This document shows positions 10,969-55,875 of a stretch of 63,986 nt of DNA, one piece after another (within the stretch, counting starts at the first letter, position 1; each line of letters opens with the position of its first letter). Source of the stretch: Gekko japonicus (lineage: Eukaryota); contig NW_015170318.1 of assembly GCF_001447785.1 (NCBI RefSeq), positions 83,181 through 147,166 of the forward strand, in the 5' to 3' direction. A program made the position numbers and the translations under genes. The notes below the pieces were generated by a model. That model did not search any database and had not been told where the DNA came from. It saw only the letters and a list, made by a program, of their open reading frames with translations.

Positions 10969-11400
10969 CTACGTGGAGGAGATGTAGCGGACCGGGAGCC
11001 CTTCCTTGCAGGTGACCCGGATCCTCGTAATTTTGCTCTCCCCCTTGTACCTGCAGAGCAACTTGCCCAGGAACCTCCTGCGCCTGCAGGTGGTGATGGG
11101 GAAGAGGATTTTGCTGCGGGTGTTGCCATCCATGATCTGCCCTCTGGAGTTGCAGATGGACTTCAGCTGCTCTTCGGTGGTGTGGATGAAGGTGTTCTTC
11201 CGCTGGCAGGCCATGCCTCTGCGGCTCATCATCTGTTTGCAGTAGTGGCTGTTGCTGCCGAAGTTCATTTTGGGGTTGTCCACGTGCTTCGTCAGAAAAG
11301 TTCTGTAGGTCGTGCCTTGGCAGGGCAGCCACAGACAGGCTGCCGTTGCCAGGAGCAGGAGGCAAAGGGTGTGGCCGGAGGGACCCCCGGGAGACACCAT
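10969..11400 (-). CDS. Secreted RNase A-superfamily protein (gene 1), predicted catalytically inactive, cationic, 143 aa
   Basis: True ATG at 11400 (ORF track starts at an upstream GTG). Signal peptide ends ...LWLPCQG; FLTKH keeps His12; CQRKNTF has Lys41->Gln; LPVR has His119->Arg; 6 mature Cys. Polypyrimidine+CAG acceptor at 11431; AATAAA (-) at 10667-10672. Confidence 0.93.
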   Translation of the reverse strand: MVSPGGPSGHTLCLLLLATAACLWLPCQGTTYRTFLTKHVDNPKMNFGSNSHYCKQMMSRRGMACQRKNTFIHTTEEQLKSICNSRGQIMDGNTRSKILFPITTCRRRRFLGKLLCRYKGESKITRIRVTCKEGLPVRYISST

Positions 11401-11491
11401 CACTGGGACCTTTGAAGTGGTGCTCTCGATCTGCAGAGGCGAGAGAAGAAGACAGGGGGGAAGAGCCTCACCTTCAACAGCTGCCAGAAGG

Positions 11492-11950
11492 ATAGGGTCG
11501 CCAGCCTCCAGCTGGGGCCTGGAGATCTCCCGCTTTTACAAGTGATCTCCTGCTGGCAGAACTCGGCTCCCCTGGAGGAAATGGCCGCTTTGAAGGGTGG
11601 ACTCTGTGGCATTGTACCATGCTGAGGCCCCTCCCCTCCCCAAACCCCGCCCTCTCCTGGCTCCACCCCCAAAGTCTCCAGGTCTTTCCCAACCCAGACC
11701 TGGCAAAACCCTACAGAAGTAACCCTGGGAAGGGTTGCTAGCTTCCGAGGATGGCCGGGGGGGGGGTCTCCTGGAATGACCACTAATCTCCAGACCACTG
11801 AGGTCTGCTCCCCTGGAGAAAGGACAGCCGCTTTGCCCAGTGGGGTCTCTGGCGTCCTATCCCTTCTGAGCCCCACCCCCAAATTCTTGCCCTCCCCAGG
11901 CACCACCCCCGAATTTCCAGGAACTTCCCAAACTGGAGTTGGCAACCCAG
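11492..11950. mobile_element. Abundant unclassified ~220-bp non-autonomous DNA element with AGGGTTGCCA-type TIRs (two adjacent copies; many more, e.g. ~16655-16880, 18803-18980, 20940-21185, 46050-46260, 53500-53720, 62715-63790)
   Basis: Recurrent agggttgccaa...tggcaaccct ends and tcccctggagaaaatggctgct core. Confidence 0.7.
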
Positions 11951-12071
11951 AGACATAAGAACATGAGAGAAGCCAGAGTTGGATCAGGCCAAGGGCCCAT
12001 CCAGTCCAGCTCTCTGTGTCACACAGTGGCCAGAAATAGCAGGGGCTATCAGGAGGTCCAACAGTGGGGCC

Positions 12072-12988
12072 AGGACACTAGGAGCCCTCCCACTGTTGCC
12101 TGCCCCCCAGCACAGATCTCTGCACAATCTAAGGAAGCTACAGTTTAGGGTCCTGACAATGTTCCCTCTAAGCTGTGGAGTCTTGTGAGCAAAAATTCTA
12201 CTCTGTGACCTACTGACATTAAAGTTGTGAGCGAGCCATTTGGCTACCGCATAAATTAGTTTTCTCTGGCGCCGTCCCTCCTGAGCTGAGACCAACATGT
12301 GTGAGCTGGAGGCTAAAAAGCTGTGAGCCGGCTCACACTAACTCAGCTTAGAGGGAACACCGGTCCTGGTGTTAGGGGGGCCTCCGTACCAACGGCCCTC
12401 CCCCCCACTCCTAAAAAGTACCGAATGACCATGTTGTGGGTCATCCCAGGGGGCCTGTTAAACTTGACAACGATCTCAATCTGGCCCTGGGCATAGGAGT
12501 TTTGTCAGGGGGGGGGGGAGGGGGCCTTTTATTAGGACACTAGGAGCCCTCCCACTGTTGCCTGCCCCCCAGCACAGATCTCTGCACAATCTAAGGAAGC
12601 TACAGTTTAGGGTCCTGACAATGTTCCCTCTAAGCTGTGGAGTCTTGTGAGCAAAAATTCTACTCTGTGACCTACTGACATTAAAGTTGTGAGCGAGCCA
12701 TTTGGCTACCGCATAAATTAGTTTTCTCTGGCGCCGTCCCTCCTGGGCTGAGACCAACATGTGTGAGCTGGAGGCTAAAAAGCTGTGAGCCGGCTCACAC
12801 TAACTCAGCTTAGAGGGAACACCGGTCCTGGTGTTAGGGGGGCCTCCGTACCAACGGCCCTCCCCCCCACTCCTAAAAAGTACCGAATGACCATGTTGTG
12901 GGTCATCCCAGGGGGCCTGTTAAACTTGACAACGATCTCAATCTGGCCCTGGGCATAGGAGTTTTGTCAGGGGGGGGGGGAGAGGGCC
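12072..12988. repeat. Near-identical tandem duplication, period 462 bp
   Basis: Units start 12072 and 12534; very few differences. Confidence 0.92.
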
Positions 12989-13160
12989 CATTTGATTCCT
13001 TGCCCACTGCTCTCGCTCTCTCTCTCTCTCGTTTATGGTTGCCATCTTCCAGGTGGGGACCTGGAGTTCTCCCAGAATTCCCGCTGGTCTCCAGGCAACA
13101 GAGACCAGCCTCCCCGGAGAAAATAGCTGCTTTGGAGGGTGGACTCTACGGCCTTGTACC

Positions 13161-13466
13161 TATAAAGTACTGAGCTGATGCACGGAGGAGTGATTTCAGC
13201 TCATACTTTATGAGGCTGCAGGATAAGTAAAGACGCTTAGTCTGGCCCGAGGCCAGCTTTTATCCCCATAGCAAAGCACACCCACACCCCTGTGATACAT
13301 TATAGACAGGGCACTCGATTCCCATAGGTCCCTTTCCGAATCCTAGCCCTCTGATAGGTGTGTGCTAGGATCTGTTCGGGCTGTTGTCTCTGTGAGTGAA
13401 GCTTGGGCCCTTCGCATGGCCACGTGCGGACCCGACCGTGTGCACGGTCGTACATGGCATACGACA
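13161..13466. mobile_element. Solo LTR, 306 bp, in the gene 1 intron
   Basis: 5-bp TSD GTACC; TA(TG decayed)...CA ends; interrupts another repeat cleanly. Confidence 0.65.
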
Positions 13467-14182
13467 GTACCCCAGAGAGGTCTCTGCCCTCCCCAGGCTC
13501 CACCTCCAAATCTCCAGGAGCTGGCAACCTGACATCATGCTAGAATCTCTGGGGGGGACCCCTCCTGCATCCCCCCCCGCTGCCTCCCCCAGTAATGAAT
13601 CTATGAAGCTGCTCCGTGCAGAGTCAGGTGACCGATCCACCCCCCTCTGCATGGTCGACACTGACTGGCAATGCACGAGATAAAGAAATCAGGCTGCTCA
13701 GCTACTGAGATTCCAGGTTACGATGAGGACAGGTGCAGGACACAGGGTTGCCAGCTCCAGGTTGGGAAATTCCTGGAGACTCGGGGAGGGGGGGCTGGGG
13801 AGAAAAGGGACCTCCCTGGGGTACCGTGCCACAGAGTCCACCCTTAAAAGCAGCCGTCTTCTCCAGGCAGGGCCGGCTCCAGCTTATTTTGCACCCTACG
13901 CGACGATCCCTTCGGCCCCCCCCAATGCGCCCACCAATTTTCAAAAATAAATGCATTTTAGGAAGAATGAAAAACACAAATAATCAAGAAACTCCCAGAG
14001 TATGGGGCCAGGTGCAGTTTGGTGCCCCTAAGGGCCGTCCCGCTCTAGGCGATCGCCTAGTTCGCCTAGTGCGTGAGCCGGCCCTGTCTCCAGGGGGGTT
14101 GGTCTCTGCAGCCAGGAGATCAGTTGTGATTTCCCCAAACATCAAGAGCATCACTGACCCAGACAGATTGTTCCCTCTATAG

Positions 14183-14470
14183 CAGGGGTGACCAAACTTG
14201 CTTAACGTAAGAGCCACATAGAATAAACATCAGATGTTTGAGAGCCGCAAGACATGGAAAAATGTTACAGGTTTTTACTGGGAAATATGCACATTTGCTT
14301 TTTGTTAACATTAAATGAGACTGCCAGCAATAATAACAAAAGCAGTAAAAGCAGATGTTGGTAATGATATTTATTTGTCCAATGATCGTTTGTTTGCTAA
14401 TGATATTTAGCTTCCCCAGCCGCCCTGCCGGGAGACACACAATTGTCGAGCTACAGTTTGGCCACCCCTG
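14183..14470. mobile_element. hAT-Charlie-like non-autonomous element (related 28331-28627)
   Basis: CAGGGGTG...CACCCCTG TIRs; TSD ctctatag/ctcaatag; second copy ctctagag/ctctaaag. Confidence 0.78.
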
Positions 14471-14786
14471 CTCAATAGCTTGTGGCTCATAGTCACTAAT
14501 GGACCTCTGCCCCATATGTTTATCCAATTCCCCCTTGAAGCTGTCTATGCTCATAGCTGCCACCACTTCCTGCAGCAGTGAATTCCACACGTTAATGACT
14601 CGTTGGGTGAAGAAGTACTTCCTTTTATCTGTTCTACGCCTACGGCTCATTAATTTCATGGAGTGCCCACAAGTTCTTGGATTGTGAGAAGGGGAGAAAA
14701 GGACTTCTTTCTCCGCCTTCTCTAGCCTCTCAGTCGCCCACGAGTGCAGCCTCTTTGGAAACGGGACATGATGGCTCTAAACTCAC

Positions 14787-14875
14787 CCAATCTTCGTGCT
14801 CTTGGCTTCCTCCTAGAAGGACTGCTGAGGCTCCCCGTCTCGGGCCTGGCTGCCTTCCAGGGCTCCTGTTATATA
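14787..14875 (-). promoter_or_regulatory. TATA box and non-coding exon 1 of gene 1
   Basis: TATATAA 14875-14869; donor TTGG|GTGAGT at 14786; predicts intron 14786-11431, the canonical two-exon RNase A gene layout. Confidence 0.7.
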
Positions 14876-15189
14876 TGGCCAGCCAGCACTCAGCGGTGGT
14901 GGAGAGGAAGAACTTCAGCCCCGGTTTAGTAACCCTGCATGTAGCAACCTTCTGAAGGTGGCGCTGGGTGGTCTGAATAAAATATAACAAGAGAAAAATG
15001 CTCAGCCCTTGCTCCTAAAGGGTTGCCAATTCCAGATTGGGGGAATTCTGGAGATTTGAAAGGGGAACCTGGGAAGGGGGGAATTTGGGGAAGGATTTCA
15101 CCCTACCTACGTATCAGGGCCGAAACCAAATTTGCACCAAGCTCCCCTGGGGCAGAGGCCCCAGAACCCGATCCTCAGAGGGCTGCTTG

Positions 15190-18100
15190 CTTCAGTCACA
15201 CTTCTTCACCACCAGGATCTGCTTCTGGTCTCAGACCACAGCAGAAGCAGACACATTTTTAACAAGAGCTGTCTGAAATTGCTACCTGCCAGGACCACAA
15301 TCTCCCTGTTTCCTGGGATATCGACAGTTTGAACATGCAGATCCATTCTACCACTAGGGAGGTGTTTTTTAAAAAAATCGCCTGTATATGCATGCATGCA
15401 CATGCGCACTTATGCATGTGCATGAATTTTGAACCTTTTGCAGTGTGTTCCATGGCTGAGGTGCTGCAATGATGTGGATGCTTGACCACTGGATGTCTCC
15501 ATGAGTAACCTGCAGCGGGGTGTGCTGTGTGGCGGATATGCCCCGCAACACTTTAAACCAGTTCAGTTAGAGGTGGCACCGTATCGCGCCAAACTGCCAG
15601 TCTGAACGCAACCATGATTAGATGTGACATATTGAAGCCAGACTGAAACTTTATGAAAACTTTCACCTTGTTTCCTTAACCCAAAGGGAGCAAAAGCTAA
15701 CAGCTAACAGCTGGTTTTGGATAGATTGTCAGTCAAAAATGCTACCTGTCAGAGAATCTGCCTGTCCCTGGTGGCAGGAACCTGGAGAAGCACCGCTGAG
15801 AACGTCTCCACCTCATCTCTCCCTCAGGCACTGGAGAGTCATTCCCAGCAAGAATAGGCCAGTGACTAAGCCGAAGGAAGACGCAAATGCTCACGTTACA
15901 CACATTCCACTGGGATCCCAGGGCTGGATTGGGCCCCTGAAGTAATTTGGTGGCCTTACCAATTATTACCCAAAGCATGGTAAAAAGTTTGCCCACAGTC
16001 GAAGAACAGAATAAGAGAAGAACAAAGTTTGAGTTCAGTGGCACCTGTAAGACCAGCAAAGTTTCATTCAAAGGTATGAGCTTTTGTGTGCACACACTTC
16101 CTCAGATGCATTGGAGTGGAAGCTAAGGGTTCACTGATATACGTAGAGCGTGAACAGCAAATCAGCATACAGCATAGTGACAATGTCTTAGCAGATGCAG
16201 AAAACTAAACAGGAATAACAAGTTACGTTTATGTGGTCACCATTTGTTGGGATCTAATTACAGGCAAAACACAGTGAACATGTCAAAACAGGAGACTGAT
16301 GGTATAAAAGGATCCTTCTTAATTGTGGGGTGCTAAGAATCATTAACTGAGACCAAGTTGTTATGCTCCATTTCCTCTTAAGCATGGATGGAGGTAAAAA
16401 AGAAGGTTCTTAGACCCGCTTTTCTCCTACCCAAAGGAGTCTCAAAGCACCTTATAATCTCCTTCCCTTCCTCTCTCAACACCTTGTGAGTCAGGTGGGG
16501 CTGAGAGAGCTCTAAAAGAGCTGTGACTGGCCCAAGGCCACCCAGCAGGCCTCATGTGTCTCAAAGCAGCAGTTCATAATCTCCTTCCCTTCCTCTCTCC
16601 ACAACTGGCACCTTGTGAGGCAGGTGGGGCTGAGTGAGAGAGCTGTGACTGGCTCCACCTCCAAAGTCTCCAGTTATTTTCCAACCCAGACATGGCAACC
16701 CTAGTGGATCCAGGAGAGGGCGGGGTTTGGGGAGGGGAGGGGCCTCGGCATGGCACAATGCCATACAGAGTCCACCCTTCAAAGCAGCCGTTTTCTCCAG
16801 GGGAGCTGATCTCTGTCAGCTGGGGATCAGCCGTAAAAGCGGGAGATCCCCAGGCCCCACCTGGAAGCTGGCAACCCTATCTCCAGGGGACCTTCACCTT
16901 ATCACTGCAGTATGCAGGTCAGCTGCAATTCCAGGACATCTCCAGGCCCCACAAAATTGCTACCTGCCAGGACCGCAATCTCGCTGTTTCCTGGGATATC
17001 AACAGTCTGAACATGCAGACCCATTCTACCACTAGGGAGGGTTTTAAAAAAAATCACCTGTATGTGCATGAATACCTATGCGCACTTATGCATGTGCATG
17101 AATTTTGAACCTTTTGCAGTGCGCCCCATGGCTGAGGTGCTGCAATAATGTGGATGCTTGACCACCGGATGTCTCCATGGGTAACCCGCAGCAGGGTGTG
17201 CTGTGTGGCGGATATGCCCCGCAACACTTTAAACCAGTTCAGTTAGAGGTGGCACCGTATCGCGCCAAACTGCCAGTCTGAACGCAACCATGATTAGATG
17301 TGACATATTGAAGCAAGACTGAAACTTTATGAAAACTTTCACCTTGTTTCCTTAACCCAAAGGGAGCAAAAGCTAACAGCTGGTTTTTGATAGATTGTCT
17401 GTCAAAAATGCTACCTGTCAGAGAATCTTTCTATCTTTCTGTCTATCCATGGTGGCAGGAACCTGGAGAAGCACAGCTGAGACTGTCTCCACCTCATCTC
17501 TCCCTCAGGCACTGGAGAGCAACTCCCAGCAAGAGTAGGCCAGTGACTAAGCCGAAGGAAGACGCAAATGCTTACGTTACACGCATTCCACTGGGATCCC
17601 AGGGCTGGATTGGGCCCCTGAAGTAATTGGTGCCCTTACCAATTATTACCCAAAGCATGGTAAAACGTTTGCCCACAGTTGGAAGAAGAACAGAATAAGA
17701 GAAGAACAAAGTTTGAGTTCAGTGGCACCTGAAAGACCAACAAAGTTTTATTCAAAGGGCTTTGGTGTGGACACACCCTTCCGCAGATGCATTGGAATGG
17801 AAGGTAAGGGTCCACTGATCTACGTAGAGCGTGGACAGCAAATTAGCATACAGCATAGTAACAATGTTTTAAAAGATGCAGAACACTAAACAGGAATAAC
17901 AAGTTACGTTTATGTGGTCACCATTTGTTTGGATTTAATTACGGGCAAAACACAGTGAACATGTCAAAACAGGAGACTGATGGTATAAAAGTTTCCTTCT
18001 TAATTGTTGGGTGATAAGAATAATTAACTGAGACCAAGTTGTTATGCTCCATTTGTTTCCTCTTAAGCATGGATGGAGGTAAGAAAGAAGGTTCTTAGAC

Positions 18101-19578: not shown

Positions 19579-20885
19579 GTTTGCACATCCTCTGGCCACG
19601 GGGTCCCCAACAGGTCCAGGCTTTCACGGGAAGCTTCCCACAGAGGACGTGTCACAACCACGCTGGGCTAATCCTTCCCCGTTTCCTGACCTGCCACTTG
19701 AACAACTACAGAAGGCCTTCTCTAACCGGCTCTTGCGACCTTCTCCTGTTGGGTACCTAAACCACCAACTGCCCTGAGTTGGGACACACAAGGAGTTCCC
19801 CGAATTAGGGGTTACAAAAAAGTGTGGTTCTTCTTTGATTAGACCCTTGGCCTACTTCTCTCTCAGTTTAGGCTCAAATGGCATGCCATCAAGAATAGCT
19901 TTCATGTGTTCCAGCACAGACCAAGGAAGACCAGGTCATGGCATGAAGGCAGGCCATGGCGAACCACCTCTGAACGTCTCTTGCCTTGAAGATCCTACCG
20001 GGTCGCCTGCCTCCACATCGCAACCCTGGACTTCCTTCAGGGCCTCCCATTCAAACACTAACCAGGGCTGACTCTGCTTGGCTTCCAGGAGCTGACAAGA
20101 CTGGCCTAGCCTGGCCCATCCAGGTCAGGGCAAATAAGTGAGCACAGTCCATAAGCAGTGTAAGAGAGAAGAGCCAGGGCTGCACTACACCCTGCAGCGG
20201 GGAAGGATTCACTGGGGTGTCTGATGAAAGGACAGGCACGGGGTGTTGAGCAGAGAGGTTCCTGAANNNNNNNNNNNNNNNNNNGGGAAAGAGAAGCTGA
20301 GTGAGTGTGAGCTAGCTCACAGCTTTTTAGCTTCCAGCTCACGGATTTCTGTCTTAGCTCAGGAAGGGATGGTTCCAGAGCAAACCAATTTATACAGTAG
20401 CCAAATCGCTCGCTCACACCTTTAATGCCAGTAGCTCACAAAGTAGCACTTTTGCTCACAAGATTCCACAGCTTAGAGGGAGCATTGCCCAACAGGCCCA
20501 TGCTTTCACGGGAAGCTTCCCACAGAGGCCGTGTCACAACCACGCTGGGCTAATCCTTCCCCATTTCCTGACCTTCCTCTTGAACAACTATAGGAAGCCT
20601 TCCCTAACCTGCTCTTGCAACCTTCTCCTGTTGGGTACCTAAACCACCAACTGACCTGAGTTGGGACACACACGGAGTTCCCCAAATTAGGGGTTACGAA
20701 AGGTGTGGTTCCTCTTTAGTAAGACCCTTGGCTTACTTCTTTCTCAGTTTAGGCTCGATTATGGCCTGTCATCGAGAATATCTTTAATTTGTTCCAGCAC
20801 AGACCAAGGAAGACCAGGGGTGTGACGTGGAGGCAGGCCATGGCGAACCACCTCTGAATGTCTCCTGCCTTGAAAAACCTACCAG
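19373..20885. repeat. Two tandem copies of a block paralogous to window start 1-1280; partial further copy ~22020-22525
   Basis: Shared cccaacaggtcc...gggttac...ttgccttgaa sequence at ~175-560, 19605-20267 and 20488-20885. Confidence 0.9.
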
Positions 20886-24522: not shown

Positions 24523-24801
24523 TGTTATGTCCGCAGACCCCCACCAGGGGCCAGCGAATACCCCAGAGCTTGACTCTGTAAGAACAATGGGGACGAGGCT
24601 CCTAGTCTCTCCAGTTGGGAACGAATAGGACCGTGGCGGGAGATTTAAACCCACCAACGGGACCTAGGGGGGCGTCCCCAGGTGTGTATATAGTTGGCCA
24701 GCCGGCCATTAGTCTTTGTCTTTTGTTGTGTACCAGTAAACCATGCTGATCACTACATCGGTCTCCGTGGTTTCTACATGCGTCTAACCCACTACACTTC
24801 A
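24523..24801 (+). mobile_element. Solo LTR, 279 bp
   Basis: TG...CA; 5-bp TSD AGCAC; TATATA ~24687; AGTAAA ~24735. Confidence 0.8.
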
Positions 24802-24882
24802 AGCACCAAGAACACGGTGTTACTTGACTTGAAGACAAACCAGATGAGACACAGGGAACAGATCTCCAGTGTTGTTGCCATG

Positions 24883-24956
24883 TCTTCTTCTTCTTCTTCT
24901 TCTTCTTCTTCTTCTTCTTCTTCTTCTTCTTCTTCTTCTTCTTCTTCTTCTTCTTC
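24883..24956. repeat. (TTC)n microsatellite; others (GAA)n ~37088-37118 and (TTC)n ~52460-52510
   Basis: Direct observation. Confidence 0.97.
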
Positions 24957-25343
24957 GTTACTGAATAGCAGCACAGAGGGAGCTCAATCAATCAATCTTT
25001 ATTTGTTACAGCACCAAGCTAGCAAATCAGTAACATCACGCAAAATAGATATAAACAATTTGTTAAAATACAAATATACAAATATAAAAACCATAGTCTA
25101 AAAGATCTGAGGGGTTAGATAATCTTTTCTTTGCAGGTACAGGACAAGCTGCACAGAGCAGCCATTTTCTCCAGGGGAACTGATCTCTGCCGTCTGGAGA
25201 CCAGCGGGAATACTGCTGGATCTCCAGCCTCCATCTCAAGTCGCTTTCAACTTACGGCCACCCTATGCATGAATGGCCTCCAGAATGCCCTACCATTAAC
25301 AGCCTTGCTCAGGTCTTGCACACGGAAGGCCCTCGTGGCTTCC

Positions 25344-26932: not shown

Positions 26933-27379
26933 ATGAGGCCTTTGGGAGGCAAGTGTTGTTTCCTGCTCCTGTTGCTGGTGGCCGAATTGCTGCCCGGATC
27001 CTCCGGCGGCAACAACCCCCGCTACGAGAAGTTCCTGAACCAGCACCGGGACGATCCCAGGAGCAGTTTCCACGGCCGGTACTGTGACGGCCTGATGCGC
27101 AGCCGGGGCCTCACCAAACCCGAGTGCAAGGAAGCGAACACCTTTATCCATGGCTCCAAGAGGCGGATCCGGGCAGTGTGCGGCCAGGGGGGGGTTCCCA
27201 GCGGACAGCTGCAGCGCAGCCGGCAGCCGTTCCGGGTCACCAGCTGCACCCTGAGGGGCGGCTCCACCCGCCCGCCCTGTGAGTACAAGGAGAATACCTC
27301 GCCCAGGTACATTGTCATCGGCTGTGAAGACGGCTGGCCCGTCCATTACGATGAGAGCCAGATCGTGACCACTGTCTGA
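26933..27379 (+). CDS. Angiogenin-like secreted ribonuclease (gene 2), intact catalytic triad, 148 aa
   Basis: ATG 26933 follows acceptor-like AGs at 26905-06 and 26920-21. Signal peptide; RYEKFLNQH, CKEANTFIH, GGSTRPPC, GWPVHYDES closely parallel angiogenin motifs; 6 Cys. AATAAA 27607-27612 with GT-rich downstream element. Orthology to ANG not established. Confidence 0.96.
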   Translation: MRPLGGKCCFLLLLLVAELLPGSSGGNNPRYEKFLNQHRDDPRSSFHGRYCDGLMRSRGLTKPECKEANTFIHGSKRRIRAVCGQGGVPSGQLQRSRQPFRVTSCTLRGGSTRPPCEYKENTSPRYIVIGCEDGWPVHYDESQIVTTV

Positions 27380-32872: not shown

Positions 32873-33944
32873 AGATCACTGGGATTGGGCCAAGGGCTGC
32901 AACGAGAGTTTGAATCTTGGTGTGTCTCTGTTGACCAGGAGAGAAGACCACAGTCTGGATAAGGCCAGAGGGCGCTGCACCTTCTCTCAGAGACACATCT
33001 AGGGATTTTTCCAAAAATAGCCTTTAAGATTTTCAACATGGCAATTCCCATTCAGTGCCAGATTCCACAGCCAACAACTGAGTACACNNNNNNNNNNNNN
33101 NNNNNNNNNNNNNNNNNNNNNNNNNNNNNNNNNNNNNNNNNNNNNNNNGGCTTACAAACTCCTTTCCCTTCCCCTCCCCACAACAGACACCCTGTGAGGT
33201 GGGTGGGGCTGAGAGAACTCTGACACAAACTGCTCTTTTTCAAGGACAGCTGTGCCAGAGCTTGTGACTGACCCAAGGTCACATCAGCAGGTGCAAGTGG
33301 AGGAGTGGGGAATCAAACCCGGTTCTCCCAGATTAGAGTCCGCGCACTTAACCACTACACCAAACTGGCTCTCCAGAAGGAATGCAGCAGTACTTGGTAC
33401 ACAGGGCAAGCAAGCATCCCACCCCCAACCATTATGGCAGCATAGCTGACATTTAGTGGGTAAGAACCAGTCGTCTGACTATAAAAGTTTCAGGTTGAAA
33501 AAAGAAAGACCAGAGGCAGCCAACACACCCTCTAAGCTATGGAGACTTGTGAGCAAGAATTCTATTTGTGAGCTACTAGCATTAAAGTTGTGAGTGAGCA
33601 ATTTGACTACTGCATAAATTAGTTTGCTCTGGAGCCCTCCTTCCTGAGCTATAAGACAAGAATGGGTGAGCCGGAGGCTAAAAAACTGAGCTAGCTCACA
33701 CTCACTCAGTTTATTTATTTATTTATTTATTTGTCACATTTATATCCCACACCTAGGGTTGCCAAGTCCCCCCGGGGGGCAGGGAAACCCCCACTCAACA
33801 GGCCTGTTCCCCCCCGGTGTGGATCGGGCTGCCCGGGGGGACCCCACCCCCAAAGCGTGCGACGTGCCCGGCGTGAACACGTCACCCGTGCTGCTGATGT
33901 TATGTTAGGGCCAGGGCCAAGATATTAAGGGAGGCCCCCTAATT

Positions 33945-34920
33945 GAAAGCCTGGCGGAAGAGCTCCATTTTACAGGCCCTGCGGAACTGTACAAGGTTCT
34001 GCACGACCCTGATGTCATCCATGAGCTCATTCCACTAGTAAGGGGCCGCCACAGAGAAGGCCCTGACCCTTGTTGCAGCCAGCCTGGCTTCTTTAGGGCC
34101 CGGGAGGACCAGGCAATTTTGGGATCCCAATCTTAGTGCTCTCTGGGGAACATGTGGGGAAAGGCGGTCCCTCAGGTAAGTAGGTCCCTGACCATATAGG
34201 GCTTTAAAGGTAAGAACCAGCACCTTGAACCGAATCCGGTATGCTATAGGCAGCGAGTGCAGCAATTTTAGGGAAGCTGGATGTATTTTCCCACATAGGA
34301 AGACACAACAACAGCCTCGATGCTGCATTCTGCACCTGCCGCAGCTTCCAGATTTGAGACAAGGGCAGCCCCATGTAGAGAGCATTGCAGTAGTCCAATC
34401 TCGAGGTGACCATTGCATGGATCACTGTTGCCAGGTCATCGCGTTCGAGGAAGGGAACCAACTGCCTGATCAGCCGAAGATGGTAAAAGGCCGACTTGGC
34501 AGTGGCTGCTACCCGGGCCTCTATCGTTAAGGAGGCATCCAGGAGCACTCCCAAACTCCTAACCTCCGGCGCTGGCACTAGCGGTGCCCCATCGAAGGTC
34601 AGGAGAGGGATCCTTAACCCTGGCCCACTCTGACTCAGGCACAGGACCTCCGTCTTCGTCGGATTCCATTTCAATCGACTCAGTCTAAGCCAACCAGCCA
34701 CGGCTTTCAACGCCAGGTCCAGGTCTCCTGGACTAGAGTCTGGCTGGCTGTTCAACAACAGATACAGCTGGGTGTCATCTGCATACTGTTGACAATCCAG
34801 CCCATGCCTCCGGGCAATCTGGGCAAGGGGGCGCATATAGAGGTTAAGTAACATCGGGGAGAGCACTGCCCATTGGGGCACTCTGCATATTAGCAGGTGC
34901 CTTCTGGATAGCCGTTCCCT
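33945..34920 (-). mobile_element. L2-clade LINE RT fragment
   Basis: PQWAVLSPMLLNLYM, YADDTQLYL, TSRLDYCN, VQNAASR, RAFSVAAP; nested inside a split hAT MITE. Confidence 0.9.
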
Positions 34921-43176: not shown

Positions 43177-43608
43177 ATGTCCCCCAAGATCTCCTTCTGG
43201 CTGCTGCTGCGTTTGGCCGTCCTTCTGGCAGCTCTTCTGGTACAGTCCAGCGAAGGGGCCACCTACCAGGATTTCAGAAACAGGCACATAGATCATCCGA
43301 AAACCAGAGCCGCCAACAACAACGCCTACTGCAACCTCATGATGAGGCGGAGAGGCATGATGAATCGCACTTGCAAGCCCACCAACACGTTCATCAACAA
43401 CAGCCCCAACCACATCCAGCATGTCTGCCGCGGGGGAGGGCGCCGGGTGAATAGGAATATTTTCGAAAGCAGAAGGCGTTTCAGTGTCATCACCTGCCGC
43501 AGTAGAGGCCGTTTCCCTAACTGCCAATATGTCGGCAGAAGACAGAGCAAGAGAATCCGTGTGGGCTGCGTCCGCAGCCTGCCCGTCCACTTTGACAGGC
43601 TCGTCTAG
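43177..43608 (+). CDS. Highly cationic, Arg-rich secreted RNase A-family protein (gene 3), intact triad, 143 aa
   Basis: Signal peptide to ...SSEG; FRNRH, CKPTNTF, LPVHFD; 6 Cys; acceptor ttttccgtAG at 43154-43155; hand count 23 Arg in about 116 mature residues. Confidence 0.96.
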   Translation: MSPKISFWLLLRLAVLLAALLVQSSEGATYQDFRNRHIDHPKTRAANNNAYCNLMMRRRGMMNRTCKPTNTFINNSPNHIQHVCRGGGRRVNRNIFESRRRFSVITCRSRGRFPNCQYVGRRQSKRIRVGCVRSLPVHFDRLV

Positions 43609-46387: not shown

Positions 46388-46985
46388 TGCATGCCATCTG
46401 ACCCGGCTGGCCCAGGCTACCCTAGTCTTGCCAGATCTCGGAAGCTACGCAGGGTCAGCCCTGGTCAGCATTTGGATGGGAGACCATCAAGGAATACCAG
46501 GGTCACTACACGGAGGTAGGCATGTCGCGCAGTCTCGCGCAGTATGCGTCACCGGGTCAGCTTTCAGCCAAAGATCCAAATTGCACCCTGCTAAGATCCC
46601 ACTGCAGTAAACCACGCTCACACAGTTCTTGCGGTTGACTGTATACAGCGATTTATTTCCAATATATACAGCTCTCTCCGTCAAAGTGCTCCGCCATACG
46701 CTCATACAAATAGAAGGGAATACAATGTACAGACTACACACACTTATATACACTTGACCAGCCAACCAGCTTACTGCAGAGTCACAGTGAGGTAGCTCAG
46801 CTTAGCTCCAGTCAGAATGGTTTGCTCTGGTTCTTCAGACTGTCAGACACCTGTCAAATAGATTGGCATGATCACACGTGCTGAAGCTTTATACCTCTCA
46901 ACAAGGCAATGGCAAACCATCTGTGAACGTCTCTTGCCTTGAAAACCCTACGGGGTCGCCACAGGTTGGCTGGGACGTGACATCC
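46388..46985 (+). mobile_element. 5S rRNA-derived SINE with RTE-like tail, interrupted by a solo LTR; related copies ~560-690(-), 20000-20131(-), 21950-22158(-), 30570-30772(-)
   Basis: gatctcggaagcta.gcagggtc...tggatgggagacc matches the 5S internal control region; followed by ggcaaacc...gccttgaaaacccta tail. Confidence 0.75.
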
Positions 46986-47802
46986 AAAGACAGAGCCAGG
47001 TTCCCCCTATCAGGGAGCCCTAAAGCTTGAAGTGATAGCAGAGTTCTGTCGGTGCCGTCTGATCTGTGAATTCACACATGCCAGTCAGTGTTCCCTCCAA
47101 GCCACCGGTTCCCGAAATGGGCAACACTGCTGGAACGATCCAGGTGGGCGGTAGGAGGGAGGTAGGCATGTCGCGCAGTCTCGCGCAGTATGCGTCACCG
47201 GGTCAGCTTTCAGCCAAAGATCCAAATTGCACCCTGCTAAGATCCCACTGCAGTAAACCACGCTCACACAGTTCTTGCGGTTGACTGTATACAGCGATTT
47301 ATTTCCAATATATACAGCTCTCTCCGTCAAAGTGCTCCGCCATACGCTCATACAAATAGAAGGGAATACAATGTACAGACTACACACACTTATATACACT
47401 TGACCAGCCAACCAGCTTACTGCAGAGTCACAGTGAGGTAGCTCAGCTTAGCTCCAGTCAGAATGGTTTGCTCTGGTTCTTCAGACTGTCAGACACCTGT
47501 CAAATAGATTGGCATGATCACACGTGCTGAAGCTTTATACCTCTCAACAAGGCAATGGCAAACCATCTGTGAACGTCTCTTGCCTTGAAAACCCTACGGG
47601 GTCGCCACAGGTTGGCTGGGACGTGACATCCAAAGACAGAGCCAGGTTCCCCCTATCAGGGAGCCCTAAAGCTTGAAGTGATAGCAGAGTTCTGTCGGTG
47701 CGGTCTGATCTGTGGATTCACACATGCCAGTCACTGTTCCCTCCAAGCCACCGGTTGCCGAAATGGGCAACACTGCTGGAACGGTCCAGGTGGGCGGTAG
47801 GA
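46512..47802. repeat. Near-identical tandem duplication, period 646 bp
   Basis: Units start 46512 and 47158; duplicates the solo LTR with both TSDs. Confidence 0.92.
46523..46903 (-). mobile_element. Solo LTR, 381 bp (second copy 47169-47549)
   Basis: TG...CA ends; 5-bp TSD AGGCA; TATA then AATAAA on the minus strand. Confidence 0.82.
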
Positions 47803-50379: not shown

Positions 50380-50690
50380 AAAAGGTAAAGGTTCCCTTGC
50401 TCAAAAGCCAGTCGAATCCGACTCTAGGGTTGCAGTGCTCATCTCCATTTCAAAGCCGGAGAGCCAGCGCTGTCCAAAGATGACTGGCTTTCGAGCAAGG
50501 GAACCTTTACCTTTTACCTACAATTTATCTACTTGCCATTTCTTGCTTTCGAACTGCTAGGTTGGCAGGAGCTGAAACTAGAGACGGGAGCTCACTCCGT
50601 CATGCAGCACACTCGGGTCTCGAACTACTGAACTACCGACCTTCCACAGCCTGCAGTTCAGCGTCTTAACCACTTGAGCCACCGCAGCTC
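50380..50690 (-). mobile_element. Sauria SINE with an internal inverted tail segment
   Basis: 14-bp TSD cttgttttccagta (50366-79 / 50691-704). Confidence 0.85.
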
Positions 50691-50901
50691 CTTGTTTTCC
50701 AGTAGGATTGAGCAAAAGGGCACCTGCAGAGTTGAGTCTATTCAGGGCTTTTTTTTTCTGGGGGAAAACGCTGGAACAGAGTTCTGGAACCTCTTTGACA
50801 AAATTCTTTTTAAAATGTTTAAAAGTTCTTGAGTTTTCAGTAAACAGATTGAAAACTTCATTTCCCTCTTGAGAGTTCTGGAACCTCTTTTTCAAAAAAA
50901 A

Positions 50902-51610: not shown

Positions 51611-52894
51611 GGGATAGCCTCTGAAATCACTGCCCTTGTCCGCCCTGCCAACAGGTTGACAGGCAATCAGGGGGAGTTGGGGTAGGGGAGCCGAGGCTCA
51701 GGAAGGGGGCCCATAAAAACTGCTAGGGGGCCAGGCCCCGTGGGCCCCGCGTTAGCTACGGGCGTGGCCTTCTTGCAGACGTATGCCCCAGCACGACCAA
51801 GGATGAGCGTACAGGATTTATACCAGGGCACAGTAACTGCTGTGCAGAAGATTGCATTTTAGCAGAGACAGACAGAGGGGAGTGAACAGCTACGCTTTGA
51901 TCCTCCTGCACATTTTGATTGTGCAGAACTGCTGCCCTCTACTAGTGGGTCATGTGTTTACTACATGTGCCAGGTTGTAAAAGCAGGGAAATGACAAGGA
52001 GAGAGCCAGTTTGGTGTCATGGTTGAGTGTGCGGACTCTAATCTGGGAGAGCCATGTCTGATTCCCCGCTCCTCCACTTGCATCTGCTGGATGACCCTGG
52101 GCAAGCCGAAGTTTTGATAAGAGCTGTCCTTGAAAAAGAGCAGTTTCTGTCAAGAGCTCTCTCAGCCCCACCTACCTCACAGGGTGTCTGTTGTGGGGAG
52201 GGGGAGGGAAAGGAGTGTGTAAGCCGCCCTGAGACTCCTTTGGGTAGTGAAGGGCGGGGTATAAATCCAATCTCTTCTTCTTCTTCAGAGGCTTCATGAC
52301 CCACTTTTCGGTCCCAGCCCACAGGCTGAGAAACTCTAGTTCCAGCTCCTGCCAACCTATCAGTTCGAAAGCAAGAAATTGCAAGGAGATAAATAGGTAC
52401 CACTTCAGTGGAAGGAAGGGAACAGCGTTCTGTGCAGCCTTGGTGTTTAGTCATGCCGGCTTCTTCTTCTTCTTCTTCTTCTTCTTCTTCTTCTTCTTCT
52501 TCTTCTTCTTTTCAGAGGCTTCATGACCTGGTTTGGGGAGCCCTCCTCTATCTTATTTATGGCCATCAATTAATAAACATGTTTATTTTTATTATTGTTA
52601 AGTTTCCTCCACAACCTACAGTAAATTTTGCCGTTTACTTTTTAAAAATTCCTAATGCGAATGCCTATTTGTTTCTATTGGGAACGCCATGAGTGTAAGT
52701 CGCCAGCTGGAGCATTCTTCAGGTTTCCTCCCTCTCTTCAAGGTCTCTAATGACCGCTCTCTCTTCTGGGGACCTGGGAACACGTGACCACTACCGGACA
52801 GACAATTCCACAAGCTGCATTTGCTGAGGCTAGCTTTTGACCTGTTGAGAACATCTTGTGGAATATATCTTTATATCTATCTGGAATATATCTT

Positions 52895-53006
52895 TATAAA
52901 ATCAATCACTTGTTTCCTCCACAGCCCTTCCTCCATTTTGTGCTGCCAAGAACCATCTAAGGTGAAGACTGCAAGCAGTGGAGAACTCGAAAGCATTTGG
53001 GTGCAG
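52895..53006 (+). promoter_or_regulatory. TATA box and non-coding exon 1, probably of gene 4
   Basis: TATAAAA 52895-52901; donor CAG|GTCAGT at 53007 (or TTGG|GTGCAG at 53001); exon end resembles gene 1 exon 1 end (cgaa..attgggtg). Confidence 0.55.
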
Positions 53007-54767
53007 GTCAGTTGCAAAAACCATGTGGATAAACTGCTTCTGTGGGGGAGAGGGGTGGTGGTTGTGGGGGGGATCCTTCCCTAAAATGGAAGAGAAAGGG
53101 GGAAGAAGGCAGTTAGCTGAAGAGAAAAGAGGATTTCCTTGAAGTGTTACCAAAGTTGTCTTTACAGGGATAGCATTGTCACTTTCTCTACCGGAAATCT
53201 CATTGGGGATTACTGTAAACTGATGATCTAAAGCATAAAACATAACACTGTTGGTGTTACCTTCTTTGACAGGGAATTACAGAGACGTCATGAAACCCAC
53301 GTTCATTTTCTTTCTGCAAATCACTGCATACAGCCATAGGATTGATGGGTTATAGGATGTGAGGATTTCTACGGGGGTTTTTCCCCCCTCCCGGTAGCAG
53401 CATGAATCATGCAGTTCTTCCGACAGAATGGCATTTCCGTGTGCAGAACAGTGACTTCTGCTGCCCCCCCCCACATACACACACTTTACCCCATGTGCTA
53501 TGGGTTGCTAACTCTGAGTTGGGAGATTCCAGGAGATTTGAGGTGGAACCTGGGAAGGGTAGAGTTTTGGGTAGGAGAAGGAACACGGTGAGGCATAATG
53601 TCATAGACTCCGCCCTCCAAAGCAGCCATTTTCTCCAGGGGAACTGTTTGTGGTTGTCTGGAGCTCAGTGGTAACTCCAGATCTCCAGGCCCCACCTGGA
53701 GGTTGCCATTGCCATCCCTATGCTATTCCCGATCCTCTGCCCATCCCTGGCCGATTCCTGCCCATCCCTGAGATTGGCAGGGTAGAGAGTTCACTGCTGT
53801 TTCTGACTCCCACAGTAGCTGCCCAACTGAACATAAATGGAGGAGGAGATTGGATTTATACCCCGCCCTTCACTACCCAAAGGTGTCTCAGAGCGGCTTA
53901 CAAACTCCTTTCCCTTCCCCTCCCCTGTGAGGTGGGTGGGGCTGAGAGAACTCTGACAGAAACTGCTCTTTTTCAAGAACAGCTCTGACAGAACTATGGC
54001 TTGCCCAAGGTCATCCAGCGGCTGTGAGTGGAGGAGTGGGGAATCAAACCTGGTTCTCCCAGATTAGAGTCCGCGCACTTAACCACTACACCAAACTGGC
54101 TCTAGTAGGTAACCCTGGCCTTCATCTTGGCACACAGCACCCGTTTCTTAAAAGTCTGACGAATGGTTGAGGGATGTTGTCAAAATGCGTCATTACCTGG
54201 ATCAGTGTATGAATTTGTCCCCAGTGCAAAACGTTCAGGCATATTATGAACTGAATGGCATTAGCTCCCCGCCCCTCCAAAAAAAGCTCTTCTGTCTCAG
54301 AATGTAAATTAAGAGTCTGTGAGATTCTGCCCACATGGACCGTTCTCATTCAGTGGGCCAGGCATCCAAAGCCTGCTGGTTTATGGACATACACACAAAA
54401 AGTCCTTTAACATCTCTCTTACTCCAACTTCAACTCATGTTAATGGCTAGCAAACGTATGAAGTAGAAAATCACCCACTTTGTTGGGGCACACACAAAAA
54501 GTTCCTTAACGTTAAGCCCTTTGCTTTTGAAGATACTGCCCTTTGATTGCTTTGGACTATGTCGTTAGACGAGTTTTTGTTTGATGAGTATCTTCTTTTG
54601 TCTGTCTGGGTCATTTTTCTAGATTGCTGCAAACCTCTTAGCCAGCACTTGTTCCCTCTGCAGAGTTCTGCCTTGCTTCCACACAAGTTGGGGGAGGGGA
54701 CTGAAAGGTCCAGCCACTTTCCCCCACAATTGAGTCTCCGAACAGCCGTTTCCAGGAGGCAATAGGA

Positions 54768-55087
54768 CAGTGATGGCGAATCTTTTAGAGACCGAGTGCC
54801 CAAACTGTGACCCAAAACCCACTTATTTGTTGCAAAGTGCCAACACGGCGATTTAATCTGAATACTGAGGTTTTACTTTAGAAAAAAACAACTCATACAT
54901 TAACTTAAGATGACCCAAACAAAGTAAGGAAAGCAATTCCAAATGCTTTCATTTACTTAAAATTATTTGGCAGAGAATTCGACGCTTTAACGATAGTCTG
55001 GGCCTGGCTGGGGCGATGGCACGCGTGCCCGCAGAGAGGGCTCTGAGTGCCGCCTCTGGCACCCGTGCCATAGGTTCGCCACCACTG
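54768..55087. mobile_element. hAT non-autonomous element (partial inverse copy ~48124-48352)
   Basis: CAGTG(A/G)TGGCGAA TIRs; TSD caatagga/ccatagga. Confidence 0.78.
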
Positions 55088-55440
55088 CCATAGGAGAAGC
55101 CACATCTATGCAACCTTCACGTGCATTTTGTAGCAGAAGAAGAAACAGAGGCCTAATCCAAATAATACTATTTTCCCTATTACAAGTGGCCTGCATGTGT
55201 GTGGCAAAATCCTGGGTGTGCCCCTGGTTTGCACAGGAGACATCCACAGTAGCCACCTCCCGCAAGATCAGGAGACCAAAGGCAGAGAAAGAGGAGTCAG
55301 AGAGAAGCTTCTAGCATAGACAGAGGAAGGCTTCACACATAGCGCCAAGGGAAATACAGGGCTCTCCAGTGTCCAGGAATTGTGAGTCGCCTTTACTCCA
55401 ACACTTCCTCTCCCTTTCTTCTCCAGCGAAGGACTCAGCC

Positions 55441-55875
55441 ATGGTCTTTCTCTCCTTACCGCTCCCGTTCTCCGTCCTCTTCCTGGTTTCCTTGGTGGAC
55501 AAGAGCCAAGCTACTTACCAGACTTTCCTGAGGGAACACGTCGACCCCATGCGGATTATAATCAACCCCCATTTCTACTGTCAGGAGAAGATGAAAGCCC
55601 AGGGCCTGACGAGTCCCACCTGTACGGAAAAGAACACCTTCATCCACGCCAGCAACATCCAAGTCAAAACTATCTGTGGTGTCGGAGGAATGCATTCCAG
55701 CAACACCTCTTCGGACAGCCTGGCCAGCTACATAATCACGACCTGCCATTCCAGTGGGGGCTCCCCCCCAGACGACTGCAAATACAGAGGCCAAGGCGAG
55801 CGCCGGAGGATTCGGGTGACCTGCTCCAGAAGGGTCCCTGTGGGCATCATAAAAATCCTCACTACCTGGCCCTGA
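55441..55875 (+). CDS. Secreted RNase A-superfamily protein (gene 4), predicted catalytically inactive, 144 aa
   Basis: Strong Kozak gccATGg at 55441 after a long polypyrimidine tract and AG at 55425-26. FLREH keeps His12; CTEKNTF has Lys41->Thr; VPVG has His119->Gly; 6 Cys. Confidence 0.92.
   Translation: MVFLSLPLPFSVLFLVSLVDKSQATYQTFLREHVDPMRIIINPHFYCQEKMKAQGLTSPTCTEKNTFIHASNIQVKTICGVGGMHSSNTSSDSLASYIITTCHSSGGSPPDDCKYRGQGERRRIRVTCSRRVPVGIIKILTTWP

What the first reader, a model, noticed from the sequence alone, without database searches (positions are those of the whole stretch)
10969..55875. Pair of intact but catalytically dead RNase A paralogs: a candidate reptile non-canonical RNase subfamily
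Seen: genes 1 and 4 keep open frames, signal peptides, all 6 Cys, His12 and splice/promoter signals. Both lack Lys41 (Q, T) and His119 (R, G), and both carry a Lys two residues later (CxxKNTFIH). They also share TYxTFLxxHVD, ITTC, CxYxG and RIRVTC. Known: His12/Lys41/His119 are required for RNase A catalysis, and mammalian RNases 9-13 are the textbook non-catalytic members. Inference: these two descend from one ancestor that lost catalysis independently of mammals and was retained for a non-enzymatic role (antimicrobial, RNA or heparin binding, inhibitor decoy, reproductive tract).
Basis: partly seen in the sequence, partly recalled or inferred. Interest (0 to 1): 0.85.

Follow-up and report, generated by a model that had tools for sequence, protein, structure and literature searches.

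The report
Two triad-less gecko RNase A paralogs
Two intact secreted RNase A-type genes in this Gekko japonicus cluster lack the catalytic lysine and one catalytic histidine; one belongs to an old lineage found across lizards and snakes, the other to a gecko-only lineage, so reptiles appear to keep probably non-enzymatic RNase relatives, much as mammals keep RNases 9-13.

Summary
The window is a Gekko japonicus scaffold with four intact single-coding-exon RNase A genes. Gene 1 (10969-11400, minus) reads C-Q-R-K-NTF and PVRY. Gene 4 (55441-55875, plus) reads C-T-E-K-NTF and PVGI. Both keep His12, six Cys and a signal peptide, and both give confident RNase A folds. The assembly gaps are intergenic.

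- Gene 1 belongs to a well-supported squamate-wide clade (geckos, a skink, lacertids, snakes) with Gln at position 41. Most members keep His119, so gene 1's His119-to-Arg change is recent and independent of gene 4's.
- This clade is at least as conserved as the catalytically canonical paralog clades.
- Gene 4 belongs to a gecko-only clade (three gecko families) that lacks both residues and always has Lys43.
- Whether the two clades share a Lys41-less ancestor is unresolved (AU p 0.48-0.77; gene 4 with gene 3's clade fits equally well).
- The shifted Lys is not conserved in gene 1's clade, and the shared motifs are general family features.

No paper describing these lineages was found. Another note of this scan flags a further triad-defective RNase elsewhere in this genome.

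The parts
10969..11400 (-). Gene 1 coding sequence (143 aa plus stop). It has a signal peptide and an RNase A domain with Gln41, Lys43, Arg119 and Ile121. It is a member of the squamate Gln41 clade.
   Evidence: ORF. Pfam PF00074 E 2.9e-19. Alignment to turtle RNase 2zpo. AF2 pLDDT 89.9. Foldseek TM 0.90 to 2zpo. 99-100% identical to the NCBI model P0001 of Gekko japonicus.
11401..11432 (-). Gene 1: 5' end of the coding exon (11401-11430) and the splice acceptor AG (11432-11431), preceded by a polypyrimidine tract.
   Evidence: Sequence read. tblastn of model P0001 starts at 11430.
14781..14990 (-). Gene 1 upstream exon, probably 5' UTR, ending at 14787, with its GTGAGT donor at 14786-14781. 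The intron down to 11431 is 3,356 nt.
   Evidence: tblastn of P0001 residues 6-74. Sequence read.
10667..10672 (-). Gene 1 candidate polyadenylation signal AATAAA, about 300 nt after the stop codon.
   Evidence: Sequence read. Not tested with reads.
55441..55875 (+). Gene 4 coding sequence (144 aa plus stop). It has a signal peptide and an RNase A domain with Thr41, Lys43, Gly119 and a C-terminal extension. It is a member of the gecko-only clade.
   Evidence: ORF. Pfam E 9.7e-21. Orthologs in Euleptes, Eublepharis and Gekko kuhli. AF2 pLDDT 90.8. Foldseek TM 0.89 to 2zpo.
55425..55440 (+). Gene 4 splice acceptor AG (55425-55426) after a pyrimidine tract, followed by a short 5' leader.
   Evidence: Sequence read. 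The upstream exon was not located.
26933..27379 (+). Gene 2, a canonical angiogenin-type RNase (CKEANTF, PVHYD). It serves as an internal control with an intact triad.
   Evidence: Its clade includes Anolis, Thamnophis and Podarcis genes.
43177..43608 (+). Gene 3, a canonical, very basic RNase (CKPTNTF, PVHFD; pI 11.8). It serves as an internal control with an intact triad.
   Evidence: Its clade includes Heteronotia, Sphaerodactylus and snake genes.
20267..20284 (.). Assembly gap between gene 1 and gene 2. It is intergenic.
33088..33148 (.). Assembly gap between gene 2 and gene 3. It is intergenic.

Best explanation
Genes 1 and 4 are functional genes for secreted, three-disulfide, cationic RNase A-fold proteins that have lost the canonical catalytic machinery. 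They represent two separate non-canonical lineages.

Gene 1 is a fast-evolving Gekko duplicate within a squamate-wide clade. In that clade Lys41 became Gln before geckos, skinks, lacertids and snakes diverged. The clade's typical state is Arg11-His12, Cys-Gln41-Arg42, His119 and Ile121. Gene 1 has additionally lost His119.

Gene 4 belongs to a clade seen only in geckos (Gekkonidae, Sphaerodactylidae, Eublepharidae). That clade lacks both Lys41 and His119, always carries Lys43, and has a C-terminal extension.

Shown here: intact frames, the RNase A fold, clade membership, residue states, and cross-species conservation.

Inferred: ordinary RNA cleavage is abolished or reduced by orders of magnitude in genes 1 and 4, and the proteins are kept for a binding-type role. 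The retained His12/Asn44/Thr45 pocket and the high positive charge (pI 10.5 and 9.4) make polyanion, RNA or microbial-surface binding in host defence the likeliest role.
For: - Pfam and PDB sequence matches with the residue states.
- AF2 models with pLDDT 90-91, superposing on turtle RNase and angiogenin at TM 0.89-0.90.
- Squamate Gln41 clade supported at 97-98/95-96, containing Gekko, Euleptes, Heteronotia, Lerista, Zootoca/Podarcis/Lacerta and at least 8 snake genera.
- A wider clade with Alligator (Arg41) and Pelodiscus (Gln41) at 95/80.
- Mature-domain identity in the Gln41 clade: gecko-skink 74.5%, gecko-lacertid 71.8%, skink-lacertid 74.5%. The canonical gene 2 clade gives 53.6-56.8%, the gene 3 clade 49-57%, and the gene 4 clade 62-63% across three gecko families.
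- If all missense change were neutral, about 10.6 nonsense events would be expected in the Gln41 clade and 3.4-6.5 in the gene 4 clade. None is seen in the full-length sequences used for the trees.
- GC3 is 0.86 in gene 1 and 0.74 in gene 4, as in the intact genes 2 and 3.
- Canonical GT-AG structure for gene 1.
- Experimental analogues in human angiogenin: K40Q is described as 'enzymatically inactive' (PMC3973227); K40I has 0.7% and H114R 1.6% of wild-type activity (PMC3493651).
Against:
- No nucleotide-level selection test: ortholog DNA could not be fetched.
- Protein databases are biased towards intact ORFs, so the missing-stops argument is inflated.
- Gene 1's branch carries about 20 changes against 4 in its conservative paralog P0002, which would also fit relaxed constraint.
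- The Gekko kuhli models for the likely orthologs of gene 1 (P0175, domain 1) and gene 4 (P0009) have aberrant C-termini. These could be annotation errors or real disruptions.
- Orthology within the canonical control clades is assumed, not shown.
- The proposed function is inferred only from charge and retained pocket residues.
Confidence: 0.6

Rival explanations
1. Genes 1 and 4 are sister lineages descended from one ancestor that had already lost Lys41, and so catalysis. Their shared Lys43 would be an inherited compensating or replacement residue.
For: - Gene 1 and gene 4 are slightly more alike (40%) than either is to genes 2 or 3 (31-38%).
- On 136 rows, the tree with the two clades held together had a log-likelihood 12.65 higher than the free search found (p-AU 0.77).
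- It is not rejected on 73 rows (p-AU 0.48).
Against: - No tree recovers the grouping with support.
- Gene 4 with gene 3's clade fits equally well (lnL difference 0.19, p 0.49).
- The residue at position 41 differs: Q in gene 1's clade, T or M in gene 4's.
- Lys43 is not conserved in gene 1's clade (K, K, R, G, S, S).
- His119 was demonstrably lost independently.
- Positions 41 and 119 change at least 15 and 16 times on the tree.
- A common ancestor would have to predate the squamate radiation, and gene 4-type genes would then have been lost in all non-gecko squamates sampled.
Confidence: 0.25
2. The active site is rewired rather than dead. A basic residue elsewhere takes over the role of Lys41: Arg or Lys at position 11 next to His12, Arg42, or Lys43. 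The proteins, or at least the His119-retaining members of the Gln41 clade, would then still cleave RNA at a low but biologically relevant rate, as angiogenin does.
For: - His12, Asn44, Thr45 and Phe46 are invariant, and His119 is kept in most Gln41-clade members over the whole squamate radiation.
- Position 11 is Arg or Lys in essentially all Gln41-clade members, and Arg42 is common.
- Basic residues at position 11 occur in 13 of 22 sequences without Lys or Arg at 41, against 23 of 112 with Lys41.
Against: - The association between position 11 and position 41 is not significant once relatedness is allowed for (sign test median p 1).
- Genes 1 and 4 themselves also lack His119, the general acid, and Asp121.
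- In angiogenin, K40Q, K40I and H114R each nearly abolish activity (PMC3973227, PMC3493651).
Confidence: 0.15
3. In Gekko japonicus, gene 1, and less probably gene 4, is a redundant duplicate in early decay. On this view its frame is still open only because too little time has passed.
For: - Gene 1's branch has about 20 amino-acid changes against 4 in its paralog P0002 (branch lengths 0.24 against 0.019).
- It has lost His119, which the clade otherwise keeps.
- A conservative paralog exists on the same scaffold.
- The Gekko kuhli models for the likely orthologs have abnormal C-termini.
Against: - All six Cys, His12, the NTFIH core and the signal peptide are intact. The signal peptide is 30 of 30 identical to P0002's.
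- GC3 is 0.86.
- Splice signals are canonical.
- Gene 1 shares derived states with the G. kuhli copy P0175 domain 1 (T31, K38, S51, K55). This suggests the lineage predates the species split and has stayed open since.
- Heteronotia keeps three Arg119 copies of the same clade.
- Gene 4's clade is intact in three gecko families.
Confidence: 0.15

Closest known systems
Mammalian non-canonical RNases 9-13 of the RNase A superfamily
   Same: [quoted passage not shown] They are thought to have non-enzymatic roles (Goo and Cho 2013, PMC3845642).
   Different: - The gecko genes are far less degenerate. They keep His12, the xNTF(I/V)H core and six Cys, and they match Pfam and turtle RNase at E around 1e-20.
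- Their nearest relatives are sauropsid RNases, so the loss is most likely separate from the mammalian one.
- RNase 9-13 sequences were not in my trees, so this was not tested directly.
Angiogenin (RNase 5) and its K40Q, K40I and H114R variants
   Same: - They share the same three-disulfide fold: 30-36% identity and TM 0.82-0.89 normalised to the target.
- Gene 1 naturally carries the equivalents of K40Q and H114R, which nearly abolish angiogenin's activity (PMC3973227, PMC3493651; PDB 1b1e and 5m9t listed).
- K40Q angiogenin still shows a non-enzymatic protective activity (PMC3973227).
   Different: Those are laboratory or disease variants of a catalytic enzyme. Here the states are fixed and conserved across species.
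Green turtle egg-white ribonuclease (PDB 2zpo) and other canonical sauropsid RNases
   Same: It is the best sequence and structure match (E 2.1e-20; TM 0.89-0.90). It shares the length, the Cys pattern and the RRIRV.C and NTFIH motifs.
   Different: The turtle enzyme has the full triad (CKFTNTF, PVHY), whereas genes 1 and 4 do not.
Unnamed 'ribonuclease-like' models of squamates, for example Crotalus, Naja, Thamnophis, Zootoca, Podarcis, Lacerta, Lerista, Heteronotia and Euleptes
   Same: These are the orthologs of gene 1. They share Arg11-His12, Cys-Gln41-Arg, PVH(Y/F)I and about 142 aa.
   Different: Most keep His119, whereas gene 1 has Arg119. They carry only automatic names, and no paper describing them as a subfamily was found.

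Membership tests
RNase A superfamily (Pfam PF00074) | Profile match above the curated cutoff | tested here: met
   Gene 1 scores 70.1 bits and gene 4 scores 74.8 bits against a cutoff of 23.1.
RNase A superfamily (Pfam PF00074) | N-terminal signal peptide and uninterrupted coding exon | tested here: met
   Both have single ORFs with a hydrophobic N-terminus, and a splice acceptor just upstream of the ATG. AF2 predicts an N-terminal helix followed by the domain. No signal-peptide predictor was run.
RNase A superfamily (Pfam PF00074) | Six to eight conserved Cys and the RNase A fold | tested here: met
   Each mature domain has six Cys in the conserved columns. pLDDT is 89.9 and 90.8, and TM to 2zpo is 0.90 and 0.89.
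Canonical (catalytic) RNase A members | Catalytic triad His12 / Lys41 / His119 | tested here: not met
   His12 is present. Position 41 is Gln in gene 1 and Thr in gene 4. Position 119 is Arg in gene 1 and Gly in gene 4.
Canonical (catalytic) RNase A members | CKxxNTF signature | tested here: not met
   The genes read CQRKNTF and CTEKNTF.
Canonical (catalytic) RNase A members | Measurable ribonucleolytic activity | not testable with these tools
   This needs a recombinant protein assay. Only the angiogenin K40Q, K40I and H114R analogues are available from the literature (PMC3973227, PMC3493651).
Squamate Gln41 'ribonuclease-like' clade (unnamed) | Placement inside the clade in a maximum-likelihood tree | tested here: met
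   Gene 1 falls inside a 12-row clade with support 98/96 (136 rows) and 97/95 (73 rows). Gene 4 falls outside it.
Squamate Gln41 'ribonuclease-like' clade (unnamed) | Basic residue at 11, Gln41, His119, Ile121 | tested here: inconclusive
   Gene 1 has Lys11, Gln41 and Ile121, but Arg119 instead of His. Three Heteronotia copies also have Arg119.
Mammalian non-canonical RNases 9-13 | Orthology to the mammalian RNase 9-13 clades | not tested
The nearest relatives of genes 1 and 4 are all sauropsid, which argues against membership.
Processed or decayed pseudogene | Premature stops, frameshifts, or lost Cys or splice signals | tested here: not met
   Both frames are open, the six Cys are kept, the GT-AG signals are canonical and GC3 is 0.74-0.86.

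The most novel reading that the evidence does not exclude
Squamates carry an ancient RNase A lineage, at least as old as the squamate crown, in which the catalytic Lys41 was replaced by Gln. This lineage has since been held under constraint as strong as, or stronger than, that on the catalytic paralogs. Geckos have added a second lineage with no Lys41 or His119 at all. If so, sauropsids evolved conserved RNase A pseudoenzymes independently of mammalian RNases 9-13. These would have a still unknown binding function, or an unconventional catalytic arrangement using Arg11, Arg42 or Lys43.
Probability: 0.5. Interest if true: 0.65.

Novelty: new variant of a known kind. Interest (0 to 1): 0.55.

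Why it matters
RNase A is a textbook enzyme, and non-catalytic relatives have been discussed almost only for mammalian RNases 9-13.

A Gln41 lineage conserved across lizards and snakes, together with a gecko-only lineage lacking two triad residues, would show that the RNase A scaffold has been reused for non-enzymatic work repeatedly in amniotes. It would also give naturally 'K41Q' proteins, shaped by long selection, for asking what the fold does without catalysis: host defence, polyanion or RNA binding, receptor signalling, or acting as an inhibitor decoy.

There is also a practical point. Automatic 'ribonuclease-like' or 'angiogenin-like' names in reptile genomes should not be read as enzymatic activity.

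Tried and rejected
No ortholog or paralog DNA could be fetched, so no dN/dS was possible.
There is therefore no expression, splice-junction or read-depth evidence, and read laying was not used.
- Model coordinates are not exposed, so where Lys43, Arg42 or residue 11 point could not be measured.

Analyses that led nowhere or were set aside:
- Positive selection on gene 1. Its signal peptide and 5' exon differ from P0002's at 3 of 105 codons, against 28 of 113 in the mature domain (Fisher p 1.5e-6). I set this reading aside. Gene 1 shares derived states with a G. kuhli copy (P0175 domain 1), which points to an older duplication with gene conversion of the 5' part. The four Gekko sequences form an unresolved polytomy.
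- Basic residue at position 11 against loss of Lys41, and loss of Lys41 against loss of His119. Neither association is significant with independent pairs.
- Placement of gene 4's clade. It is unresolved in all three trees. The AU test of gene 4 with gene 2's clade did not finish in time.
- Literature. Six searches found no description of reptile non-canonical RNases. 'Ribonuclease' transcripts are reported from oral or venom glands of some lizards and snakes (bioRxiv 10.1101/006031; PMC5488037). I could not link them to the Gln41 clade because the sequences are held only as images.

Full report
**What is in the window**

The window comes from a 541 kb Gekko japonicus scaffold. The proteins of gene 1 and gene 4 match G. 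japonicus entries at 99-100%. It holds four intact RNase A-type ORFs and no further fragments:
- gene 1: 10969-11400, minus strand
- gene 2: 26933-27379, plus strand
- gene 3: 43177-43608, plus strand
- gene 4: 55441-55875, plus strand

All four match Pfam PF00074 far above the cutoff. The best solved relative is green turtle egg-white RNase, followed by angiogenins.

The N runs at 20267-20284 and 33088-33148 are intergenic. No exon or reading frame of any RNase gene crosses a gap. Only the order and spacing of the genes rest on scaffolding.

**The observation**

| Gene | Around His12 | Around position 41 | Around position 119 |
|---|---|---|---|
| Gene 1 | TKH | A-C-Q-R-K-N-T-F-I-H | P-V-R-Y-I |
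| Gene 4 | REH | T-C-T-E-K-N-T-F-I-H | P-V-G-I-I |
| Gene 2 | QH | CKEANTF | PVHYD |
| Gene 3 | RH | CKPTNTF | PVHFD |

In genes 1 and 4, His12 is kept, Lys41 and His119 are replaced, Asp121 is Ile, and a Lys sits at position 43. Genes 2 and 3 are canonical. Each mature domain has six Cys.

Gene 1 has a canonical acceptor at 11432-11431. It also has an upstream exon ending at 14787 with a GTGAGT donor, and an AATAAA about 300 nt after the stop. Gene 4 has an acceptor at 55425-55426.

AlphaFold2 models have mean pLDDT 89.9 and 90.8. They superpose on turtle RNase 2zpo with target-normalised TM 0.90 and 0.89.

**Gene 1's relatives**

Homology searches and name look-ups place gene 1 in a clade that contains:
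- a second G. japonicus gene on the same scaffold but outside the window (P0002, 80% identical)
- Gekko kuhli
- Euleptes europaea
- three to four Heteronotia binoei copies
- a skink (Lerista)
- lacertids (Zootoca, Lacerta, Podarcis)
- at least eight snake genera

The clade has support 98/96 on 136 rows and 97/95 on 73 rows.

Its consensus is Arg11-His12, Cys-Gln41-Arg42, Pro-Val-His119-(Tyr/Phe)-Ile121. Gln41 therefore predates the divergence of geckos from other squamates. On the 73-row tree, an alligator gene (Arg41) and a softshell-turtle gene (Gln41, Gln119) join the clade with support 95/80.

His119 is retained in P0002, G. kuhli P0003, Euleptes, the skink, the lacertids and the snakes. 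Arg119 occurs only in gene 1 and in the Heteronotia copies, which makes two separate losses inside the clade.

Position 43, the 'shifted Lys', is K, K, R, G, S or S across the clade, so it is not conserved there.

**Gene 1 within Gekko**

Gene 1 sits next to P0002 on the tree, with branch lengths 0.24 and 0.019. By parsimony, about 20 changes fall on gene 1's branch and 4 on P0002's.

Gene 1 shares several states with the first domain of a fused G. kuhli model, P0175 (Thr31, Lys38, Ser51, Lys55, Arg106-Arg107). This suggests the duplication predates the species split. The identical signal peptides of gene 1 and P0002 (30 of 30) would then reflect gene conversion. The four Gekko sequences remain an unresolved polytomy.

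Gene 1 is thus the faster-evolving member of a duplicated pair. Whether that speed reflects relaxed constraint or adaptation cannot be decided without DNA.

**Gene 4's relatives**

Gene 4 groups at 100/100 with Euleptes (Cys-Thr-Arg-Lys, Pro-Val-Arg-Leu) and Eublepharis (Cys-Met-Gly-Lys, Pro-Val-Asp-Leu). A G. kuhli model with an aberrant C-terminus also belongs here.

All members lack Lys41 and His119. All have Lys43 and a longer C-terminus.

No non-gecko sequence joined this clade among the 150 best representatives from an exhaustive profile search of 1.84 billion proteins.

The clade sits on a long stem (0.7-0.8 changes per site), and its position is unresolved.

**Do the two lineages share a dead ancestor?**

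| Grouping held together | Rows | Log-likelihood against the free tree | p-AU |
|---|---|---|---|
| Gene 1 clade + gene 4 clade | 136 | 12.65 higher (the free search missed it) | 0.77 |
| Gene 1 clade + gene 4 clade | 73 | 1.07 lower | 0.48 |
| Gene 4 clade + gene 3 clade | 73 | 0.19 lower | 0.49 |

Four points argue against it:
- The residue at position 41 differs between the clades.
- His119 was lost independently.
- Positions 41 and 119 change at least 15 and 16 times on the 136-row tree. That sample was enriched for non-canonical members by the query profile.
- Even the Heteronotia ortholog of canonical gene 3 has Met41 and Arg119, and many turtle paralogs lack the triad or even Cys40.

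The motifs shared by genes 1 and 4 match the consensus of the wider alignment, so they are general family features.

**Are they maintained by selection?**

The evidence is therefore at the protein level.

| Clade | Comparison | Mature-domain identity |
|---|---|---|
| Gln41 (gene 1) | gecko-skink | 74.5% |
| Gln41 (gene 1) | gecko-lacertid | 71.8% |
| Gln41 (gene 1) | skink-lacertid | 74.5% |
| Gln41 (gene 1) | gecko-snake | 49-64% |
| Gene 2 (canonical) | gecko against lacertid, Anolis, snake | 53.6-56.8% |
| Gene 3 (canonical) | gecko-gecko and gecko-snake | 49-57% |
| Gene 4 | across three gecko families | 62-63% |

The triad-less lineages are thus at least as conserved as the catalytic ones, provided the control comparisons are between orthologs.

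If every missense change had been neutral, about 10.6 nonsense changes would be expected in the Gln41 clade and 3.4-6.5 in gene 4's clade. None is seen in the full-length sequences used for the trees. This argument is inflated because databases favour intact ORFs.

GC3 is 0.86 in gene 1 and 0.74 in gene 4, matching the intact genes 2 and 3.

**Likely mechanism**

In human angiogenin, the closest well-studied relative:
- K40Q is described as enzymatically inactive, yet it retains a protective cellular activity (PMC3973227).
- K40I keeps 0.7% of wild-type activity and H114R keeps 1.6% (PMC3493651).

Gene 1 carries the equivalents of both K40Q and H114R. Gene 4 lacks both residues. Ordinary catalysis is therefore very probably abolished in these two proteins, though this is an inference and was not measured.

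His12, Asn44, Thr45 and Phe46 are invariant. The proteins are strongly basic, with pI 10.5 and 9.4, and 9.9-10.9 across the Gln41 clade.

The most likely role is a secreted binding protein for polyanions, RNA or microbial surfaces, probably in host defence. The His119-retaining members of the Gln41 clade might keep a weak, rewired activity using Arg11 or Arg42. That idea is open and untested.

**What could not be done**

I did not try to get around it, and read laying was not used.

**Novelty**

Six literature searches found no description of reptile non-canonical RNase A lineages. The proteins carry only automatic names such as 'ribonuclease-like'.

Non-catalytic RNase A paralogs are a known kind, namely mammalian RNases 9-13 (PMC3845642). 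I therefore rate this as a new variant of a known kind.

Another first-stage note in this scan flags a further triad-defective RNase elsewhere in the same genome (s1-828021). I did not check it.

Noticed in passing
window 43177-43608 (+): Gene 3 is a canonical-triad RNase with an extreme charge: mature pI 11.8, with 26 Lys+Arg against 4 Asp+Glu. Its Heteronotia relative P0027 has Met41 and Arg119, and snake relatives have Thr41. Triad loss therefore also occurs inside this otherwise canonical clade.
   Followed up: partly
outside the window, same 541 kb scaffold (protein P0002): A second G. japonicus Gln41-clade gene, 80% identical to gene 1, keeps His119 and has a very short branch. Its signal peptide is identical to gene 1's and its upstream exon is about 95% identical at the translated level. 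This suggests gene conversion of the 5' part.
   Followed up: partly
Gekko kuhli proteins P0175 and P0009: P0175 is a fused model of two adjacent RNase genes, with the first domain truncated. P0009, the gene 4 ortholog, has an unrelated C-terminus after CKYRG. Either the annotation is wrong or these copies are disrupted in G. kuhli.
   Followed up: no
turtle proteins P0085, P0105, P0188, P0194, P0199 and relatives: Several turtle-only RNase A clades lack Cys40 (and so the Cys40-Cys95 disulfide). Most of them also lack Lys41 and/or His119, and several share a PVRLV C-terminus. Non-canonical RNases thus seem widespread in turtles.
   Followed up: partly
Podarcis raffonei XP_053216783 and XP_053216788: A gene 2-clade member ('angiogenin-like') and a Gln41-clade member have accession numbers five apart. 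This hints that the gene 1 / gene 2 neighbourhood seen in this window is conserved in lacertids.
   Followed up: no
window 34204-34881 (-) and 56844-57182 (-): These ORFs carry reverse-transcriptase-like motifs (YADDTQLY) and share C-terminal sequence. They look like retrotransposon fragments lying between the RNase genes.
   Followed up: no
window 46487-46765 and 47085-47411 (-); 11984-12298 and 12476-12760 (-): These are two pairs of ORFs with identical N-terminal translations, about 600 and 490 bases apart. They point to local tandem duplications or repeated elements.
   Followed up: no
window 24602-25101 and 52408-52692: Long simple-sequence runs appear here, read as poly-Lys or poly-Ser in the ORF list.
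   Followed up: no
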